From contig CM068743.1 in assembly GCA_035084275.1 (NCBI GenBank), forward strand, positions 85,746,001 through 85,810,000: DNA of 64,000 nucleotides. Direction: 5' to 3'. Source of the stretch: Hydrolagus colliei (lineage: Eukaryota). Position 1 is the first letter of the stretch; each line of letters begins with the position of its first letter. The notes under the pieces were generated by a model. It made no database searches and was not told the origin of the DNA. It was given only the letters and a program-made list of their open reading frames with translations. Made by a program: the position numbers and the translations under genes. Positions 1,133-60,100 of this stretch are shown in pieces.

Positions 1133-1520
1133 AATAGTAATAATAATCCGTGCATTGAGTTTGTGCTTCATCATGTTGTTGAGCCGTCTCAAAATACTTC
1201 ACAGGATATACTGCAAAGTGCAGTGATTGTGTATTTTGTGGGCAAAACGCGGCAGCCGGTTGCACACAGAATGTCCTACAAACATCCATGGAGTGCAAAA
1301 TTCCCTTCTCTTTTCGAGTAGTGCCATAGGATCTTTATCTTCAATGTCCACCTGAACAGCCAGACAGGACCACAATTTAACATCTCATCCAAAGCATGGT
1401 TCCTCACGTAATGCAATGCCCCCTCCTGCGATGCGTACAGTGCCAAGCCCCAAGTCCTGATGTGGGACTTGAACTCACCACCTTCTGACCCAGAGATGAG
1501 ACTGCTACTTGGCTGACACA
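1133..1520 (-). mobile_element. Deu-domain-type SINE (SacSINE1/AmnSINE1-like), near full length
   Basis: Minus strand carries a B-box-like GAGTTCAAGTCCCAC, then GGATGAGATGTTAAA...CAGGTGGAC...AAGATCCTATGGCACTACTCGAA and an L2-type tail. Homologous to 41655-42050. Family name from recalled consensus. Confidence 0.7.
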
Positions 1521-2204
1521 TAAGATGAGTGTTTAGTGACTGATTCATTTAGTGTCTAACCTTCATTGTACTTGACCTGTTTCAATAAGCAGTAGTTGTT
1601 GAACTCACACAAGACAAATGTGATATATTTTAGTTGACTGGAACATTTTTGATACATAAATGCTGATGGCCTCACAATTTTCCTTCCTCTATGTTTTATT
1701 TCCAGTTCTTTGACAAACAAACTGGTTTGTGATAAATATTATTAACTACTTAACTGAAGAAAATATTTCTCATGCCGTAACACTGTTATGCATTATTCAC
1801 CCAGATGTGAGATAACAATTTGAACTGATTACCAGAAAGGGTTGTTGTGGCCAGAAAACTGGACTAATTTAAGAAACGATGCTATGATGAGTGTGTATTC
1901 TGGAAGGAAGTGATCAAATGGGTCAAAGGAATTTCTTCAATCAAATCTTTCTTCTTTTTTATGGAATGTTGCCAGGACAGACATGGGTTATTCAACCCTT
2001 CATGTCTGTGCTGGTATTAGAAGCTCCATTTGAAAGATCTGTGATTAATCTCATTTCACTGCTTTTCCCTATAACGTTTCATATTATTTTTCTCAAATAT
2101 TTATCTTATTCCCTTTTAAATGCTGTTATGGACTCAACCTCAACAGCCATGTGTGACAACATATTAACATTTTAACATTCCTGTCTTTAAAGAAAAGATC
2201 TTCT

Positions 2205-2665
2205 ACATCACTCCCACCCTCGTCCAGCACCACTGGCTCCCCATTCCCCAGAAGATCAAATCAAGATCGTCCTCACCTCCAAGGCCATCCATGGCCTTGC
2301 CCCTTCCTATCTCTCTAACCTGCTGACTCCCTTTAAACCTGCCCCTTCCATTCAGCGGGTTCCGATCTGCTTCACATCTCCCACCTGACCCATCCTACCA
2401 TCGGTGGCCAGACTTTCCCAGCCTCTCTGCCCCTACAGTCTGGAACTCCATCTCACAGTCCCTTTGCCTCCCCTTGCCTCCTACTAGGCAGTCTCAAGAC
2501 CCTCCTTTTCAATCGTGCCTTCTGCCGCCCTCCCACTTCTCTCCCACCCCTCCCCCCTACCCTGCCCCTCCCCCGTGCTCAGGTCCCAACCCCCTGACTG
2601 TTCAGTGCTTTGGGACGTCCTCCCGATGTGAAAGGCGCTCTATAAATGTAATATTGTTGTTGTTC
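2205..2665 (+). mobile_element. L2-clade LINE, 3' end fragment
   Basis: Degenerate ORF2 C-terminus (HWLP-like motif) and tail GGGACGTCC...GTGAAAGGCGCTCTATAAATGTAAT(TTG)n shared with other L2 copies here. Confidence 0.85.
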
Positions 2666-2880
2666 TTCTAACCTCTCCTTCCTTCTGATATCTTTTGTGA
2701 CTGATAATGAGCAGTTAATATGTAGCAAATCAAAAAATCTAAAAAATATGAAAAGCTTTTAAATTTCATCATGCGTCCTGTCATACAGAATCGAAGTTAA
2801 GAAAATGAAAGGATCTTTTGGATATTGTATGCCACTCAAGTGCATGGGAATAGTTTACGCTTAAACATAGCATGTATATT

Positions 2881-3828
2881 CAACAATTTGGTGAGCTCGC
2901 TTGTTCTTTCCAGTCAAATATGATTTGACAATTAAGAATGCACTTTTTCTTCAATCAGACAAAATGCTCTCAATAAAGCTGCCATCTGTACTGTGCTCCT
3001 TTTGACGTAGCTGTCACAGTAATGCTGTAACAAACATGTACAGTACTTTCAATAGTACTGTACAGTAAGTACTAGTAATTAAAAGCTGCGCAGTTTTAGC
3101 TGATGAAACTCTGGGATCCTCAAGCCTTGGCTCATGTCAACCAATGCCTCATATATTGCAGAATTAGGTTAGCAGGAAGCTTCCCTCCAGTGAGAGAATA
3201 CACACTCCATTCCAGAGAAATTGGACATTTGCATGTGTCTATAACATACATATTTGTAACACTTAGTCTGGTTTGGATACCCTTAAACATGGTGACTATT
3301 TTTTTGCATGCATCAGATACCCAGCTGACAAAAATCTATGCACTGGAGATAAAATTCCAATGACAAGCAATGCAATGTACATATAAAATCACCTGTTCCT
3401 TTTTAACGCTGAAATTCAGGATTTTTCAACCTAAAAAGTATTTGTAATTCTCTCCTTTCACACAAGTTTACATAAGGTTAGCACAACCCACAAATTAGTG
3501 AAAATTAGTTATTCATAAATGATAAACCTGCAGTAAGAATCTTATCAACCTCAAATTAACAAAGCAAGGCTGTCACATTGTATAACCGTATACCTCAGTA
3601 ACTAATTCTGTTACTATGATGGGACACTAAGAACCATAAGAGCACGTGTTTCCCAGTAGACCAGTGACCCGTACAGCAATTTGGTGAGGTCGCTTGTTAT
3701 TTCCAGAGAAAAATAATTTGACAATTAAATATACGCTTTTTCATCAACTCGACACAATGTGCTTGGGAATGCTGCCATGTGTTCTGTACTCTTTTTGACC
3801 TAGCTTCTCAGCTGACAAGAGTAATGCT
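2881..3828 (+). repeat. Pair of diverged ~150-bp direct repeats (2881-3027 and 3674-3828)
   Basis: CAATTTGGTGAG(C/G)TCGCTTGTT(C/A)TTTCCAG...ATTTGACAATTAA...GCTGCCAT...TTTGAC...AGTAATGCTG is colinear in both copies. Confidence 0.8.
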
Positions 3829-12625: not shown

Positions 12626-12950
12626 AATAATAATAATAATCCGTGCACTTGATGTAGTGCTTTTCATATCTTCTCGCTGTCTCAAAGCGCTTCACAGAAT
12701 ATACTGTAAAGTGAATTAACTGTACATTTGTGAGCTAAATGCAGCAGACAATTGAACACAGCAGTATCCCACAAACATTCGTGGATTGAAAACATCAAGG
12801 ACCATGATGTTGATCCAATTTATAATTTTTTGGGAAGGATTATTATTAAGCATGTGGAATAAGGAAACTTGCCCAAGGTTTCACCCTGCCTGGATTCGAA
12901 CAAGGTCTCACGCATGTAAGGCGAGTGCTCTAACCACTGAGTTACAGGAC
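12626..12950 (-). mobile_element. tRNA-derived SINE, full length
   Basis: Same family as 49201-49523: A and B boxes, (TTA)n tail. Confidence 0.9.
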
Positions 12951-14390
12951 AATTTTTAATGTCTGGATGAGACATTATTAATTCAATATATGCATTTTTT
13001 GTATTTTAATGGCATATCCGTCAGCTCTGGCATGGTTGTTGTGTTCTTAGAATCCCAGGAAGATTCAACACAGACAAAAGGTATTGAGCCGTTATGCATC
13101 TGCTGGCTCTGTTTAATTTAGTCATTTGGTCTCATTTCCTTGTTTTCCCCAAGAAATATATTCTTGCATATTGATGCAACATGAAAAACAATGCATGCAG
13201 TAGACCAACAGCAATAAGCTACTCAACAAATGATAATATATCACATGTTCTGTAAAAGTACCTTAAAGTGGTGTTTTACAAGCATTACTGACACCGACAC
13301 TGATTTTAGTGTAGCAATTCTCTGCGGTGCACTGATGTTTCTCAGTAGACGTCCTCCTGAAGTGAAAGGCGCTATACAAGTGTAATTTTGTTGTTGTAGA
13401 CAACATGAGAAATGCAGAAATAAGTTTTAACCACCTGTCAGAATAACACAGGGATCTTCAATAATCATCTGGTGTGATCTACTTGTTCAAGGTGATCACC
13501 ATTGTAGCCTATTGCAGCCATTGAGATTCTTCTTATGCAAAACTTTGAATAGCAATTCTTTTGAATCAATTGATATGCACTCTGGATGGAGTGGAACAAC
13601 AGCCTCGATGTAAGATTACCACCATATACAGTGATTTTTGCCATGCATTGAGCTAGACAAATTAGGAAGAGGCTGGCACTGTAGGCGGAGTGAAGGCCCT
13701 GGATTGGGTGGAGGTTTGGATTGCGAAGAAGCCAGCATGCCTGCAGCATGTATGCAAAGAAAACATTAATCCAATGTGATATTGCCTTAGAAATGGATTA
13801 CTAATTGTCACATATTCCTGTCATGCCTCCATGCTGTTTTTACCATTTAGAAAACAATTAGCAAATGCTGAAAGATGTGATCTGACACAAGAACAGAATG
13901 TCCTTGAACTGTTCCTTCAATCCTATTAAACTGCAGGCTAAGAAGTAATGTTTCCTGCACAGCTTGAATATGAATTTATGTACTGATCATACCAGACTCT
14001 TTTTAAGGTTAGGCTAGGCACTGCCTAATATAAATCAAGTACAGTACTGTAAACATAGAGGCTATTCAATTTGGGTTGGCTTTTTTTTAATGTCCCTGGG
14101 CAAAAGACATGGAGAAAATGTTAGTCAGTACAATGCACACATTGCAGAATAAATATTCGTGCAGGGAAAGAAACATGGGACAGATATAGAAAATAGAAAA
14201 GAGATGTAGATTAAATATCACAATATTCAAAGTCAGTGAAGCTTTTGAAATTAAAAATTGGAAGATTTTTTGTCTCACAAGCAATAGACGTAGGCTAATT
14301 CCCATATGCCTTTGAAAAGCAAGAAAATAAGTTTTCTGTTGTACCATTAAATTTGTGTTCACACATTAAAAAACACTCCACTTCATAATA

Positions 14391-15130
14391 CAGTAGAACC
14401 TCGGTAAAGCAACCACCCACAGGACCACGACCAGGTGAGGTTAGTGAGGTGTCGATTCTGCTGGATGGAAGATTAAACTATTGGCTACCATCCATGCAGA
14501 GTTGGAGAGGCTGGGGAGGGAGGATACTCGAGACTGGGGAATGGGAATACTCGAGGCCGAGGGGAGGGGGATACTCGGAGGAGGTGTCTCGGGGCCAGGG
14601 AGTGGGGATACTTGAGGCCGGGGGGAGGGGGATACTCGGAAGAGGTGTCTTGGAGCCGGGGAGTGGGAATACTCAAGGCTGGGGGGGACGAGGGATACTC
14701 GGAGGAGGTGTCTCGGGGTCGGGGTGTGGGGATACTCAAGGCTGGGTGGGAGGGGTATACTCGGAGGAGGTCTCTTGGAGCCGGGGAGTTGGGATACTCG
14801 AGGCCAGCGGGGAGTGGGGATACTCGAGGCCAGCGGGGAGTGGGGATACTCAAGGCCAGCGGGGAGTGGGGATACTCAAGGCCAGGGGGGAGAGTGATAC
14901 TCGGAGGAGGAGTGGGGATACTCGAGGCTGGTGGGGAGGGGGCCGGATGCTCCGTTACCTGCAGCTTCTCTTTCTTTTTTTACTGTCTGACGAAACATGA
15001 CCTCTTCAAATCCGCGCAAGTGCACCATCTTGTCTCGGTGACGTCACGCCGTAGCCTGCCCGCTGCCCCCCCCCACTCCCCCACGTGCTTTTATTCCCTG
15101 ATCAGCCAGAGTGGTCGCATTAGGACCATG
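14391..15130. mobile_element. Probable Tigger/pogo-like non-autonomous element (one end only) containing a G-rich minisatellite
   Basis: Starts TA|CAGTAGAACCTCGGTAA, resembling the TIR of 36897-37759. No matching right TIR found; CR1 sequence follows at ~15140. Confidence 0.45.
14510..14935. repeat. G-rich minisatellite with alternating ~25 and ~33 bp units around core GGGGATACTCGAGGCC / GGATACTCGGAGGAGG
   Basis: More than a dozen recurrences of G(G/A)ATACT(C/T), read directly. Explains the repetitive ORFs at 14449-15133. Confidence 0.9.
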
Positions 15131-15139
15131 TAAATGTTG

Positions 15140-15780
15140 TTTGGGTTAATGTGGAGAAATGCGAAGTCTTGCATTTTGGTAGGAAGAATGAGGAGAGGTA
15201 GTATAGGCTAGATGGTACAAATTTTAAAGGGGTTAAATGAACAGAGAGACCTGGCGATCCATATAAATAAACCTCTGAAGGTAGCAGGATAGGTAGATAA
15301 AGCTGTTAAAAAAAGCATACGGGATACCAGGATTTAAAAATAGGGACATAGAATACAAAGGTCGTAGGTTATGATGAATATATAAAATACTGCTTAGCAC
15401 TAAGTTGGAGTACTGTGTTTACTTCTGGGCACCATATATTAGCAAAGATGTTGAGGCATTGGAGAGGGTACAAAGAAGATTTAACAGGATAGTTCTATGA
15501 ATGAAGGGCCTTAGTTATGATGAGACGTTATCAAAACTAGGATTATTCTCCCTAGAGCAGAGAAGATTAAGCAGAGATTTAATAGAGGTTTTCAAGATCA
15601 TGAGGGGAATTCATAGTTTGAACCAAGAAAAACTGTTTCCACTGGTATGTGAGTCACTAACCCCAAGGACACTGATTTAAGATAGTTGTTAAAAGAAACA
15701 GAAGTGAGGTTAAGAAAAAAAAATCACCCAGCGAGTTGTTCATATCTGGAATGCATTATCTGAAAGAGTATTGAAAGCAA
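15140..15780 (+). mobile_element. CR1 LINE, ORF2 C-terminal fragment
   Basis: Decayed KCEVLHFGRKN, LEYCV-FWAP, LERVQRRF and RRL-RDLIEVFKIM motifs. Confidence 0.9.
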
Positions 15781-16098
15781 TAACAACCTTTTATATGGTT
15801 TTAAACAATCCCCTACAATTTGGGGGAAATAGATTCTTAACTTCAGCTTGAAAATTAGACAGAACGAAATGCCTCTCATCTTACCATTTTCAAAATTGTC
15901 AACTTGTACCATTTTATTTTTGAAGTGGAAATTGTACTGTGAACTTCAAATTGGAAGAGGGTTTGGGAGCAGGAATAAGTTGCATTGGATTTAAACATTT
16001 AGCAGGGAAATCTCATTAAACTCGGGCTTCTTTAATATTACTCCACATAGAATGCTGACCAGAAATTTCAGCCAAATGGTCTGTACTAGATTAACTGG

Positions 16099-16365
16099 AA
16101 CAAAAACAGAAGTTGCTGGGAAAACTCAGCAGGTCAGGCAGCATCCATGGAGAAAGGAAAGTGAATCAACGTTTCGGGTCCACGACCCTTTGTCAGAACT
16201 GGAGGGAAACAGATAGTAGGGAGGGGGAGCAGGGTAGAATGGAGGAACGAAAGTCACGTCGAAGGGAAGAGCAGAACTTCTTCATGGTAGGCATTCCTAG
16301 AAGAGAAGTGGCAATGATTCAAACATAAACAAAACACAAAATACTACAGATGCTGGAAATCTGAA
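16099..16365 (-). mobile_element. Penelope-like terminal-repeat monomer with hammerhead relic, flanked by a 14-bp diverged direct repeat
   Basis: Flanks ACTAGATTAACTGG (16085-16098) and ACTAGGTTAGCTGG (16366-16379). Interior matches recalled chondrichthyan Penelope-like repeats (CTCAGCAGGTCAGGCAGCATC...AACGTTTCGGGTC). Confidence 0.65.
16163..16201 (-). ncRNA. Degenerate minimal type I hammerhead ribozyme
   Basis: Minus strand reads CAGTT-CTGACAA-A-GGGTC-GTG-GACCC-GAAAC-GTT-GATTC: CUGANGA box with G8 changed to A, perfect 5-bp stem II, GAAAC, NUH triplet GUU, weak stem I. Confidence 0.6.
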
Positions 16366-16990
16366 ACTAGGTTAGCTGGTATTTGCTGATGTGTCAGCCA
16401 ATAGGCTAAAATGCTACAATGCTTTTTGTCTGGGAAGGGGAGGACATCAGCCAGGATTGTGCTTCAGGCTTCTACTGATTACTCTACCCCACCCACTCCC
16501 AAAATGATTTGTGGGTCAAGTAATGTTAGAATTAGGCTTAGCAGCAATCCTTAAATGATTGAATAGCTTTAATAACCTTTTCAGGTGCAAATATTCTTAT
16601 ATTCTTAGCATACAGGCAGCATATTAGTCACTGTCACTCCTGATGATTATCTGTGAAAAAATATACTTAAATATTTTTCACTGAAGTAAACTAAACTTAA
16701 TCATATGGAATATTTGGTATGATTGATTTTAATATTCTAATCAATCTTGAAATTCAGAACTCTTTATTTAAAATTTATTATAATGTAATTCCTAGTAAAT
16801 AATCTGTTTCATAATCCACGATGTAACGTGATTTGATATTATTTTTTATGAATCCACATAATTGTGATATATATCTGTAAAATGCAATTTGTAAGGATGA
16901 GGTTTCATTCTCTGCGACATCCTGTGACTGCACTTCTGTGGTCATTCCCTCAGCTCCACAAATTCTGCCTCGCTTCATGCAGGAAGATAA

Positions 16991-57100: not shown

Positions 57101-60100
57101 GCGACAACACATTAAGCAGCACCACACCGCCCAGCACGCTGCCCTCAGAGCGAAATCATTGTCGACAACAGAAGGAAGTCGAACCAGCGCTTCGGAGAAA
57201 GCGACAGGTAGTGGGGCCAGTGCAGCTCAAATAATTCCTGCTTTATTTAAGAGGAGAACATTGTACCAGAGAGGGGACAAAAAGTGGCAAAGTATCACGA
57301 ACGCTGTCGCTTTTTGCATAGCAAAGGAGAGCTTGCCAATGGCGAAGGACATTAATTCAGACTTCAGACTACTTAAAAATAAGTGGCATTTTGTGGCTGT
57401 AAGTGTTATTTTTGTGTGTGAGAGAGTTAGAAGCCAGATTAGCACTGCTTCTATGTGTGTGTCTAGTCAGACACACACAGCAGTGATAATCTGGCTTCTA
57501 ACTAACAGTCAGACTGTCTGTCTCTCTCTTTTCTATTGTAATAGATCTCATTTACACGTGGACATTACATGCTACTTTCAAGCAAGAAATGGAGGAGAAT
57601 AAATCTCTAGATTTTGTTTTTGGTGTGTGTGTGTTCTATTTTGTGTTTAGAGAAGGAGGGGAGAAGGAGAGGGGGAAAGTTGGGAGAGAAGGAGAGAGGA
57701 AGAGAGGAGAGGGAGGGAGAGAATGAGAGGGGGAAAGGCGGGAGAGAAGGAGCGAGGGGAAAGGAGGGAGAGAAGGAGAGAGGCGAGGGAGGGAGGGAGG
57801 GAGAGAAGGAGAGGGGGAAAGTTGGAAGAGAAGGAGAGAGGAAGAGAGAAGAGGGAGGGAGAGAAGGAGAGGGTGAAAGGAGGGAGAGAAGGAGCGAGGG
57901 GAAAGGAGGGAGAGAAGGAGAGAGGAAGAGAGGAGAGGGAGGGAGGGAGAGAAGGAGAGGGGGAAAGGAGGGAGAGAAGGAGCGAGGGGAAAGGAGTGAG
58001 AGAAGGAGAGAGGGGAGGGAGGGAGAGGGGGAAAGTTGGGAGAGAAGGAGAGCGGAAGAGAGGAGAGGGAGGGAGAGAAGGAGAGGGGGAAAGGAGGGAG
58101 AGAAGGAGCGAGGGGAAAGGAGGGAGAGAAGGAGAGAGGGGAGGAGGGAGAGGGGGAAAGTTGGGAGAGAAGGAGAGAGGAAGAGAGGAGAGGGAGGGAG
58201 AGAAGGAGTGGGGGAAAGGAGGGAGAGAAGGAGCGAGGGGAAAGGAGGGAGAGGGGGAGGGAGGGAGGGAGGGAGGGAGGGAGGGAAGGAGGGAGGGAGA
58301 GAAGGGGAGGGAGGGAGGGAGAGAAGGAGAGGGGGAAAGGAGGGAGAGGAGACAGGCAGGAGGGAGAGGAGAGAGGGAGAGTGGAGGGGGAGGGAGAGAA
58401 GGAGAGGGGGGAGGGAGGGAGCAAACAACATTGTATAATTCAACAGACCTTGACACCAACATTACAAACTTTCTGGACCTAGCGCACGCATTTCGAAATG
58501 TGCGTGCACCGCGACTGCGCGCGCATCGTCAGTGCGGACGCACCGTCAACGCGCGCGCACCGCGACTGAGCGCGCACCATAAATGCGCGCGTGCCATTAA
58601 TGCACGTGCGCTTCGAATGCACGCGCATGCGCAGTATAAAAACTCGATAGATCGGTTTAAGCAGGTATGAGCAAACCGATATATCCATATCCGGAAAAAT
58701 CCCATATCGCCGTTCCCTAGTTCATAGTCTAGATTAACACTCCAGTTTAGTGCATGGGGAGTGCTGTAATGTCGAGAGTGTGGGACACTATTATGTGCAA
58801 ATTCTGTGCACTGTTATGTTCACCTACAAATGCACTGTCACTATACCTTATAGAAACCTTTGAAATATTTTTGTAGGATAAGGCATTACATAGAAAAAAA
58901 GGCATATTATTATGTGCATTCTATATTTCCTTTGGTAAGATTTCTGCACTAACTTAATACAACGTGAAGGTGTTTGAGAGAGAGCATGTACCAAAGATTT
59001 AATGATATTCTGTCAACCTATTCAGTGTAACTCCTGACTGGTCGGAATTAATATAATGGTCAATACAATAATGAAATATAATCTATTGGAAATGAATGAA
59101 TCCTTTATGTGTTATCAACTCCCTTGAAATGAGAAAGCATCAATTGACAACAAGCACCTTTATCTCAGGTAGCAGCTGGCTAAAATCTTAATGTGGAACG
59201 TTGATTCTGGTAGGAACAAAGGTAATGATAAAATTGAAGCTAAATTGTTCTGACAAACTGAACATTTTTCCACTTCTACCCTCTGAGCAAACTGCAAAGT
59301 ACAAATCAAGTGTGGCACAGAAGAATGGGAAATGCAGCCTCAGTCTCAACTCCAGCCTCAAAATAACTTTGCCTACTGTGTCAACTTGCACAGTTTCAAG
59401 CATTGTGACATGTGATAGAAAAATAGCCAAATGTGTTCCTAGTTGAGGTAGTTTTATGCTTTAGACATTAGGACCTGATTAGGACTTTTCAAGAGTGATA
59501 CAACTGCAGAGAAATCTTTAAGAGGTGGTTCGCTCAGACTTGATAAGATGAAGTCATTCACACAGTGAATCTATAGACAGACTACCCTCAGGTTACTTAT
59601 CAACAATACGGGCGACCCTTACACAAGTAATCCTTATATTTGTGTATGATGGGGAACAGAGGCAATTCGCTTTGTGGAATAATTTAAAGGACATAACACA
59701 TTTCATTGTTTTTAAATGCCTATATTCAATTAGATTCTATATATAACAATTCCTGGAAATAATTACAGAATCTGACCTGTATCAGACTTCAAAATTAATT
59801 GGAAGGATACAATTATGCTTTTGTTTCCAATGAACAGTCTAATTTACATGCTAAGTGTTAAGTTAATGTTTAGCTTATTACTGTCACTTACAATAACAAC
59901 CTCAAAGCACTTATAATATTGCTATTATCTCAAAATACTTCAAGGAGCAATGAGTTTTTTATTATCATGTAACCACTAGCAATCGTAAACACTCAAACAT
60001 GCCTGTGGCTTTGATAGAGAAGCATCACAGTTCACAATATTTTGTATAGCAACCTATTGATTTCCATATACAAAAGAGCTATGGCTTAATGTTTTCTGCA

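What the first reader, a model, noticed from the sequence alone, without database searches (positions are those of the whole stretch)
16085..16379. Retrozyme-like insertion: circularly permuted ~267-nt Penelope-like monomer with a hammerhead relic and a 14-bp TSD
Seen: a ~267-nt noncoding segment bounded by a 12/14-identical direct repeat (ACTAGATTAACTGG / ACTAGGTTAGCTGG). Its minus strand holds CTGACAAA-GGGTC-GTG-GACCC-GAAAC-GTT, a minimal hammerhead core with G8 changed to A, as expected from CpG decay of CTGACGA. Established: Penelope-like elements carry minimal type I hammerheads in their pLTRs, and non-autonomous retrozymes in other animals produce small circular RNAs. Recalled, not verified: in chondrichthyan Penelope-like repeats, GATGCTGGAAATCTGAA normally lies immediately before ACAAAAACAGAA..GCTGG. 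Here these two pieces sit at opposite ends of the insert, so joining the ends restores that junction. Inference: this is a one-unit copy reverse-transcribed from a circular or tandem RNA, possibly an undescribed retrozyme family in cartilaginous fish.
Basis: partly seen in the sequence, partly recalled or inferred. Interest (0 to 1): 0.8.

Follow-up and report, generated by a model that had tools for sequence, protein, structure and literature searches.

The report
Decayed solo Penelope-derived hammerhead repeat unit
This is one old, dead, exactly one-unit-long copy of a small non-coding repeat derived from Penelope-like retrotransposons; its apparent circular permutation fits the known way those elements copy themselves from head-to-tail templates, so it is an ordinary member of a known kind.

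Summary
A 267-nt non-coding insert (16099-16365) is flanked by a 12/14 direct repeat; only 50 of 20000 random places match as well. Its minus strand carries a minimal Penelope-type hammerhead whose G8 reads A. In contigs of four public runs about 74-81% of family depth has the letter that restores G8. In many contigs of all four runs, the insert's last letters are followed directly by its first letters, so the recalled junction is real and the insert is one unit long within 1-3 nt.

The 35 nt that look "moved" (16331-16365) have the size and position of the optional Penelope "tail". That tail is explained in print by internal start of reverse transcription on multi-copy tandem transcripts. A circular RNA is neither needed, shown nor excluded. 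This copy is solo, its ribozyme core is broken, and it has no unusual fold. It appears to be present in a second organism too, so no empty site was seen, and no RNA run was available. A 2026 preprint already reports such repeats in one cartilaginous fish. Seven other unchecked notes of this scan describe similar small hammerhead units elsewhere in this genome.

The parts
16085..16098 (.). Left copy of the target-site duplication (ACTAGATTAACTGG)
   Evidence: D5. It is 12/14 identical to 16366-16379. The null gives 50 of 20000.
16099..16365 (-). The insert: 267 nt, non-coding, one unit of a Penelope-derived repeat. The hammerhead-sense strand is the minus strand.
   Evidence: There are stops in all three frames of the hammerhead-sense strand, and the longest open stretch has no Pfam hit. 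The ends are adjacent in other copies. The right boundary is ambiguous by 3 nt, because AAC at 16365-16367 equals AAC at 16099-16101 ('both 3').
16164..16200 (-). Minimal hammerhead relic. Helix I has 4 bp. The core is at 16196-16190, with G8 (16191) read as A. An unpaired A sits at 16189. Helix II spans 16188-16176. GAAA is at 16175-16172, and there is no helix III. The predicted cut is between 16168 and 16167.
   Evidence: Read. The descriptor hits it with 1 core mismatch. The family majority restores G8 at 74-81% of depth. The architecture is as described in PMC4209133.
16099..16215 (-). High-copy module: the hammerhead plus about 69 nt downstream of the predicted cut.
   Evidence: X1 summed depth: 1.22 million (16084-16127), 3.39 million (16128-16171) and 0.43 million (16172-16215), against 28-31 in the single-copy flanks.
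16216..16303 (-). Low-copy middle part, specific to a small subfamily.
   Evidence: X1 depth 1,479-3,561, roughly 50-130 times the single-copy flanks and 100-2000 times less than the ends. Other contigs carry it joined to both neighbouring parts (records 5, 6, 13, 14, 22, 23, 27-30 of the 32 listed).
16331..16365 (-). Candidate Penelope 'tail' of 35 nt. Here it sits at the 5' end of the unit (hammerhead sense). In most other copies it directly follows 16099.
   Evidence: Joints and loose ends. Depth rises from about 2,000 at 16314-16320 to 0.41-0.44 million for the bins 16304-16391. Its size and position match the tail in PMC8557442, PMC11167929 and PMC3846280. The assignment is an inference.
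16366..16379 (.). Right copy of the target-site duplication (ACTAGGTTAGCTGG)

Best explanation
This is a solo, unit-length, non-autonomous derivative of a Penelope-like element (PLE). Read on the minus strand it has three parts: a 35-nt 'tail', a low-copy body of about 115 nt, and a high-copy terminal module. That module holds a minimal hammerhead and the roughly 69 nt after its predicted cut site.

The insert was probably made by PLE reverse transcriptase and endonuclease acting in trans (inferred). Reverse transcription would start internally at the boundary between the terminal module and the tail, on an RNA carrying more than one head-to-tail unit. The cDNA would end one unit upstream at the same boundary, and the staggered target cuts would give a 14-bp duplication.

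On this reading the apparent circular permutation is the known PLE tail signature: the tail sits at one end of the unit or the other.

The copy is old and dead:
- G8 of the ribozyme is lost through CpG decay.
- The duplication has 2 mismatches in 14.
- The filled site seems to be shared with a second organism.

Shown: the repeat, the duplication, the relic, the junction in other copies, and the one-unit length. Inferred: the PLE enzymes, the internal start, and the tandem template.
For: - Anatomy and duplication.
- Hammerhead type: it matches the minimal PLE hammerhead, with no helix III, an unpaired base at the 5' end of helix II and a helix I of 4-5 bp (PMC4209133). The family majority has an intact G8.
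- Junction: 13 of the 15 joints shown put 16360-16368 directly before 16095-16117, in all four runs.
- Inverted arrangement: an opposite-strand joint between 16198 and 16367 occurs in 4, 3, 1 and 1 contigs. It uses the same boundary and matches the inverted 5'-truncated copies typical of PLEs.
- Tail in print: an optional 30-40-bp extension at either end of the unit, often at one end only. It equals the stretch between two internal RT start sites; from that paper's coordinates (HHR cut 26 bp after the start codon, RT start 111-118 bp into the ORF) I place the named start about 85-92 nt downstream of the hammerhead cut. The proposed template is an mRNA consisting of multiple copies of the element, and HHR catalytic mutants did not affect insertion in vitro. 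Here the two boundaries lie 69 and 104 nt after the predicted cut.
- PLE duplications vary in length, and solo pLTRs and trans-mobilised sequences are known.
- The insert's ends are not at the predicted cut site (16168|16167).
Against: - No autonomous PLE with this terminal module was examined, so the partner is inferred.
- Plain 5' truncation does not predict a copy that ends exactly one unit upstream. Some extra step is needed, such as a transcript start, a protein block or endonuclease resolution at the tail, and none was tested.
- Loose ends at 16099, 16102 and 16331 could mark the two alternative termini. Their low-agreement consensus partly resembles diverged copies of the neighbouring sequence, so they are not firm proof of termini.
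- Depth is not monotonic from the 3' end. The stretch 16128-16171 is about 8 times deeper than its neighbours, so part of the module is shared with other families.
- The data are short contigs, not reads, so no copy was seen end to end.
Confidence: 0.6

Rival explanations
1. Retrozyme route. Tandem copies are transcribed, self-cleaved by paired hammerheads and ligated into a circle of about 266 nt. A PLE reverse transcriptase, which can start internally, copies the circle once and stops on meeting its own start. That would give an exactly one-unit copy with an arbitrary phase.
For: - The length is exactly one unit, within 1-3 nt.
- The family majority has an intact core at G8.
- Internal RT start without a 3' end is documented for a PLE.
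- Circles from hammerhead tandem repeats are documented in other animals (PMC7229834).
- Solo 'monomers' are common in retrozyme families (preprint).
Against: - The phase is not arbitrary. It coincides with a boundary used by other arrangements of the family (the opposite-strand joint at 16367) and with the expected PLE tail boundary.
- No tandem array of the unit was seen.
- The circular fold has z -0.24 on the hammerhead strand and -0.83 on the other, so it is not unusually stable.
- No RNA data exist here (0 of 17 listed runs is on record as RNA).
Confidence: 0.2
2. A multi-unit (tandem) insertion that later collapsed to one unit by unequal recombination between units, or a partial tandem in which only the tail of the upstream copy survived.
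For: PLEs usually insert as partial tandems with a 5'-truncated neighbour. Collapse keeps the duplication and an integer number of units.
Against: It still needs both ends of the original insertion to lie at the same phase, so it explains nothing beyond the main reading. Truncation at exactly the tail's first letter would be a coincidence of about 1-3 in 267.
Confidence: 0.1
3. Not a Penelope product: a short repeat mobilised by LINE enzymes (SINE-like) that merely shares a conserved domain, with the hammerhead-like letters arising by chance.
For: - The motif alone is within chance in this window: 3 hits against 1.25 expected.
- Rfam finds no hammerhead.
- The stretch 16128-16171 is far more abundant than the hammerhead core, as a domain shared among families would be.
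Against: - There is no tRNA-like or 5S-like head, no A-rich or LINE-like tail and no promoter boxes in the insert.
- The family majority keeps the full core with G8.
- The architecture matches the published minimal PLE motif point by point.
- Head-to-tail and inverted joints are PLE traits.
Confidence: 0.05

Closest known systems
Pseudo-LTR and 'tail' region of endonuclease-bearing Penelope-like elements with minimal hammerheads (Cervera and de la Pena 2014; Craig et al. 2021; Frangieh et al. 2024)
   Same: The minimal type I hammerhead has no helix III, an unpaired base before a long helix II and a short helix I. The family shows head-to-tail and inverted arrangements. A stretch of about 35 nt lies at one end of the unit or the other. 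The target duplication is of variable length.
   Different: There is no reverse transcriptase or endonuclease ORF here, and none was linked to it. The unit is only 267 nt. The two boundaries lie 69 and 104 nt after the predicted cut, against about 85-92 nt for the named RT start in the anole element (my arithmetic from its coordinates). The core is mutated at G8.
Metazoan non-LTR retrozymes (Cervera and de la Pena 2020; Li, Clavereau and Pollet 2026 preprint)
   Same: It is a short non-coding hammerhead-bearing unit of a few hundred nt with 45% G+C. It has a target duplication longer than 4 bp and a likely dependence on PLE enzymes. Solo 'monomers' are a recognised state.
   Different: The 2020 definition rests on canonical type I hammerheads in tandem arrays that are expressed as circles. 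Here the motif is minimal, the copy is solo, no array of the unit was seen and no RNA was tested.
Solo pLTRs and sequences mobilised in trans between pLTRs in rotifer Penelope elements (Arkhipova et al. 2013)
   Same: Short PLE-terminal sequences flanked by target duplications (8-10 bp there) without the ORF, and an optional 31-bp tail.
   Different: The host and family differ. Here a low-copy body of about 115 nt lies between the tail and the terminal module, and it recurs in perhaps 50-130 copies.
Plant LTR retrozymes
   Same: Non-autonomous retroelements that carry hammerheads.
   Different: Those have type III hammerheads in true LTRs, a primer binding site and polypurine tract, and 4-bp duplications. 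None of these is present here.

Membership tests
Penelope-like element terminal (pLTR-type) sequence | Minimal type I hammerhead: CUGANGA core, unpaired base at the 5' end of helix II, enlarged helix II, GAAA, no helix III, helix I of 4-5 bp | tested here: met
   All features are read at 16164-16200 on the minus strand and found by the descriptor with one core mismatch. G8 is A in this copy, but the family majority restores it at 74-81% of depth. Helix II has 5 bp here, against 6-8 bp in the published examples.
Penelope-like element terminal (pLTR-type) sequence | Family copies in head-to-tail (partial tandem) and inverted arrangements | tested here: met
   13 of the 15 joints shown are head-to-tail junctions of the two ends, and 1 of 15 is an opposite-strand junction at the same boundary. 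The contigs are short, so full arrays were not seen.
Penelope-like element terminal (pLTR-type) sequence | [quoted passage not shown] | tested here: inconclusive
   A 35-nt high-copy stretch (16331-16365) sits at the 5' end here and after 16099 in other copies. Loose ends at 16099, 16102 and 16331 are compatible with two alternative termini, but they partly look like diverged copies.
Penelope-like element terminal (pLTR-type) sequence | The same terminal sequence on an element encoding reverse transcriptase and GIY-YIG endonuclease | not tested
   There is no other copy in the window, and the genome cannot be searched with these tools. Earlier notes mention PLE remnants elsewhere in the genome, unchecked.
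Penelope-like element terminal (pLTR-type) sequence | Target-site duplication of variable length | tested here: met
   14 bp, 12/14 identical. The null gives 50 of 20000.
Non-LTR retrozyme | Tandem array of at least two consecutive units, each with a complete hammerhead (criterion of the 2026 preprint) | tested here: not met
   This is a single unit with a broken core. There is no second copy in the window and none of the 8 tandem-repeat rows overlaps it. Whether arrays of this unit exist elsewhere in the genome is unknown.
Non-LTR retrozyme | Canonical type I hammerhead with helix III and loop-loop contacts (Cervera and de la Pena 2020) | tested here: not met
   There is no helix III and no Rfam hammerhead match even at E<=10. 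The 2026 preprint also accepts minimal motifs.
Non-LTR retrozyme | Expressed as linear and circular monomer RNA | not testable with these tools
   0 of the 17 listed runs is on record as RNA. All four runs laid were contigs of DNA or of unknown kind.
Non-LTR retrozyme | Non-coding, a few hundred nt, low G+C | tested here: met
   267 nt at 45% G+C, with stops in all three frames of the hammerhead-sense strand. The longest open stretch has no Pfam hit.

The most novel reading that the evidence does not exclude
The subfamily that carries the low-copy middle part (perhaps 50-130 copies) is a cartilaginous-fish mini-element that spreads through circular RNA of about 266 nt. The circles would be made by paired minimal hammerheads. 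Penelope reverse transcriptase would start internally on the circle and stop after one turn, giving exact one-unit, TSD-flanked copies. If so, minimal Penelope hammerheads, so far poor cleavers with no clear role, would serve to make circular templates.
Probability: 0.15. Interest if true: 0.55.

Novelty: new member of a known kind. Interest (0 to 1): 0.22.

Why it matters
As it stands this is an ordinary fossil. It is one more Penelope-derived short repeat with a dead minimal hammerhead, in a lineage where such repeats have just been reported.

Its modest value is as a clean, TSD-bounded, exactly one-unit example. The ends map to the boundary between the terminal module and the tail. That is the kind of genomic footprint the internal-initiation model of Penelope reverse transcription predicts. 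A census of this small subfamily could test whether unit-length copies always share one phase (tandem transcript or tail model) or have many phases (circular template).

Tried and rejected
- Other copies in the window: none. blastn with word size 7 gave only the self-match below E 0.01, and the tandem repeat finder gave 8 rows, none at the locus.
- Rfam: no hammerhead at gathering score or at E<=10. I do not count this against the motif, because a minimal motif without helix III is unlikely to score on Rfam's hammerhead models (my own knowledge).
- Public collections: I scanned metagenome contigs (14 loci) and genome contigs (12 loci) with a 21-letter pattern from the high-copy module. blastn reported hits in 15 of the 26 loci, each only 21-23 letters at the pattern site, so these are chance hits in microbial contigs. 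No family copy was obtained and the loci were not used further.
- Coding potential: rejected. There are stops in all three frames of the hammerhead-sense strand, and the longest open stretch (51 aa) has no Pfam hit at E<=10.
- Viroid-like stable fold: not seen. z is -0.46 (linear) and -0.24 (circular) on the hammerhead strand, and -1.3 and -0.83 on the other strand. The control was a mononucleotide shuffle and the copy is decayed, so this is a weak test.
- Empty site: not found. Organism B contigs run from the flanks into the insert on both sides (15744-16124 and 16340-16690). Each reaches only 26 letters into the insert, below the tool's 31-letter rule for bridging. No joint skipping the insert is among the 15 joints shown (143 not shown). 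X7 has no listed contig at either junction.
- Loose ends: I first read those at 16099, 16102 and 16331 as true termini. On inspection their consensus partly resembles the neighbouring family sequence, so I downgraded them.
- Two word look-ups were blank or off topic.
- The supplementary tables of the 2026 preprint, which would name the species and families, were not seen.

Full report
What is there. Window 16099-16365 is a 267-nt stretch flanked by ACTAGATTAACTGG (16085-16098) and ACTAGGTTAGCTGG (16366-16379), 12 of 14 identical (family D5). Random places of the window with the same spacing, allowing 3 nt of slack at each end, reach 12 or more of 14 in 50 of 20000 trials. I therefore take the repeat as a real target-site duplication. 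The right boundary is ambiguous by 3 nt, because AAC at 16365-16367 equals AAC at 16099-16101 ('both 3').

The stretch is non-coding. All three frames of the hammerhead-sense strand have stops, and the longest open stretch (51 aa) has no Pfam hit at E<=10. The window holds no second copy and no tandem array at the locus.

The hammerhead relic. Reading the minus strand:
- Helix I 5' strand at 16200-16197.
- Core CTGACAA at 16196-16190.
- One unpaired A at 16189.
- Helix II of 5 bp with a 3-nt loop at 16188-16176.
- GAAA at 16175-16172.
- The palindromic ACGT, with no helix III.
- A predicted cut between 16168 and 16167.
- Four pairs of helix I after the cut.

This is the published architecture of the minimal hammerhead of Penelope-like elements. 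That motif has no helix III or loop 3, an unpaired base at the 5' end of an enlarged helix II and a helix I of 4-5 bp, and it is thought to act as a dimer (PMC4209133; passages, sections 5 and 11).

Position G8 (16191) is A in this copy. G8 mutants of a Penelope hammerhead do not cleave (PMC11167929), so this copy should be inactive.

The motif alone is not beyond chance. A descriptor allowing one core mismatch finds 3 hits in the window against 1.25 expected, and none with an exact core. Rfam gives no hammerhead match at gathering score or at E<=10. Its models are unlikely to score a motif without helix III, which is my own knowledge rather than a test.

Family evidence. I laid Logan contigs of four runs on 15600-16900 at 80% likeness. 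The runs were two of organism A, one of organism B and one unlabelled, chosen from the 17 runs listed.
- At 16191 the + strand T is read as C in 74%, 75%, 74% and 81% of the depth.
- At 16165, 96% of depth (X1) has G. That turns a wobble pair of helix I into a Watson-Crick pair.
- Of the 15 joints shown (143 more not shown), 13 are 'goes back 251-267' joints from 16360-16368 to 16095-16117. For example, 16364 to 16099 occurs in 23, 23, 18 and 14 contigs.
- Loose ends at 16095 and 16367 read the same junction.

So in many other copies the last letters of this insert are followed at once by its first letters.

The unit is a mosaic by abundance. In X1 the single-copy flanks have summed depth 28-31. 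Across the insert the depths are:
- 16084-16127: 1.22 million.
- 16128-16171: 3.39 million.
- 16172-16215: 0.43 million.
- 16216-16303: only 1,479-3,561.
- 16304-16391: 0.41-0.44 million.

At 16314-16320 the depth is still about 2,000, so the high-copy right end begins near 16331. The tool warns that depth is not copy number, so I use only the contrasts. The two ends belong to a very large family, and the middle belongs to a small subfamily, perhaps 50-130 copies. Other contigs carry the middle joined to both neighbouring parts (records 5, 6, 13, 14, 22, 23 and 27-30 of the 32 pieces listed). All internal junctions of this copy therefore recur elsewhere.

Age. Organism B contigs run from unique flank into the insert on both sides: 15744-16124 with 7 other letters and 11 gap letters, and 16340-16690 with 2 other letters. 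Each reaches only 26 letters into the insert, below the tool's 31-letter rule, so presence in organism B is likely but not proven. No empty site was seen. The duplication has 2 mismatches in 14. At least six positions of the insert differ from a family majority of 74-96% in X1 (16165, 16191, 16240, 16265, 16285, 16314; 37 more rows not shown). The copy is old.

How it most likely arose. Penelope-like elements insert as tandem or partial-tandem copies, often with an inverted 5'-truncated neighbour. They also carry an optional 30-40-bp 'tail' at either end of the unit, often at one end only (PMC8557442, passages; PMC8969392; a 31-bp tail and 8-10-bp duplications in PMC3846280).

For an anole element the tail was shown to be the stretch between two adjacent internal start sites of reverse transcription. 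The paper places the hammerhead cut 26 bp after the start codon and the named start 111-118 bp into the ORF, so I put that start about 85-92 nt downstream of the cut. The authors' proposed scenario has a repetitive locus transcribed into an mRNA consisting of multiple copies of the element, and hammerhead catalytic mutants did not affect insertion in vitro (PMC11167929, whole main text).

Here the 35 nt at 16331-16365 normally follow 16099 but sit at the other end of this copy. The two boundaries lie 69 and 104 nt after the predicted cut. An opposite-strand joint between 16198 and 16367 (4, 3, 1 and 1 contigs) uses the same boundary in an inverted arrangement.

I therefore read the 'circular permutation' as the Penelope tail signature on a unit-length, non-autonomous derivative. 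Reverse transcription would start internally at the boundary between module and tail on a multi-unit RNA, and the copy would end one unit upstream. The enzymes, the template and the reason for stopping exactly one unit upstream are inferred, not shown.

The circular-RNA rival. An internally initiating reverse transcriptase on a circle of about 266 nt would also give exactly one unit, and I cannot exclude it. Several points count against it:
- The phase coincides with a boundary used elsewhere in the family.
- Minimal Penelope hammerheads cleave poorly in vitro.
- In the anole work no RNA-seq reads beginning or ending at the presumptive cut site were detected.
- No array of this unit was seen.
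- This copy has no unusually stable circular fold (z -0.24 and -0.83).
- No RNA run was available (0 of 17).

The insert's ends are not at the ribozyme cut site, so it is not a copy of a linear self-cleaved monomer.

Comparison with what is known. It works like, and most likely is, a Penelope-terminal derivative. As a non-LTR retrozyme it fails at this locus: it is solo, its core is broken and its motif is minimal. By the criteria of the 2026 preprint it could at most be a 'monomer' of such a family, if arrays exist elsewhere. That preprint used tandem arrays of two or more units with canonical or minimal hammerheads. It found such elements in one Chondrichthyes genome, with a mean consensus of 363 bp, and derived them from Penelope pLTRs. 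Its supplements were not seen.

Earlier notes. Seven other first-reader notes of this scan describe small Penelope- or retrozyme-like hammerhead units elsewhere in this genome, and two follow-ups describe dead Penelope-like elements. I checked none of them.

Verdict. This is a new member of a known kind and of low interest. It offers a small, testable question about phase that a genome-wide census could settle.

Noticed in passing
window 15600-15775: A second high-copy repeat lies about 320 nt left of the insert. Summed contig depth rises from about 7,800 to 195,000 in X1, against 28 in the flank, in all four runs. I did not classify it.
   Followed up: no
window 16128-16171: This 44-nt stretch just downstream of the predicted hammerhead cut is about 8 times deeper than the hammerhead core and the tail (3.39 million against 0.43-0.44 million in X1). 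It may be a conserved domain shared by further repeat families.
   Followed up: partly
window 12880-12952 (-): A tRNA-like sequence: Rfam tRNA at 36.8 bits, and ARAGORN calls tRNA-Val with anticodon TAC. I did not determine whether it is a tRNA gene or the head of a SINE.
   Followed up: partly
window 16198 and 16367: Some contigs of all four runs join these two places on opposite strands (4, 3, 1 and 1 contigs). This looks like head-to-head inverted copies of the family that begin at the hammerhead.
   Followed up: partly
window 16115-16117: Three of the 15 joints shown link 16367 to 16115-16117 instead of about 16099 (7-11 contigs each in X1). This would be a family variant lacking roughly 14-16 nt at the junction.
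   Followed up: no
window 14536-14942: A G-rich minisatellite with periods of 61/125 and 26 nt.
   Followed up: no
window 57650-58421: A long purine-rich (GA) low-complexity array with periods of 8, 25 and 58 nt. It lies inside a stretch that another first-reader note describes as hAT insertions into SINE copies.
   Followed up: no
window 22378 (+) and 61410 (+): Two further hits of my relaxed hammerhead descriptor, each with one core mismatch. With 3 hits in all against 1.25 expected from shuffles, they are probably chance.
   Followed up: no
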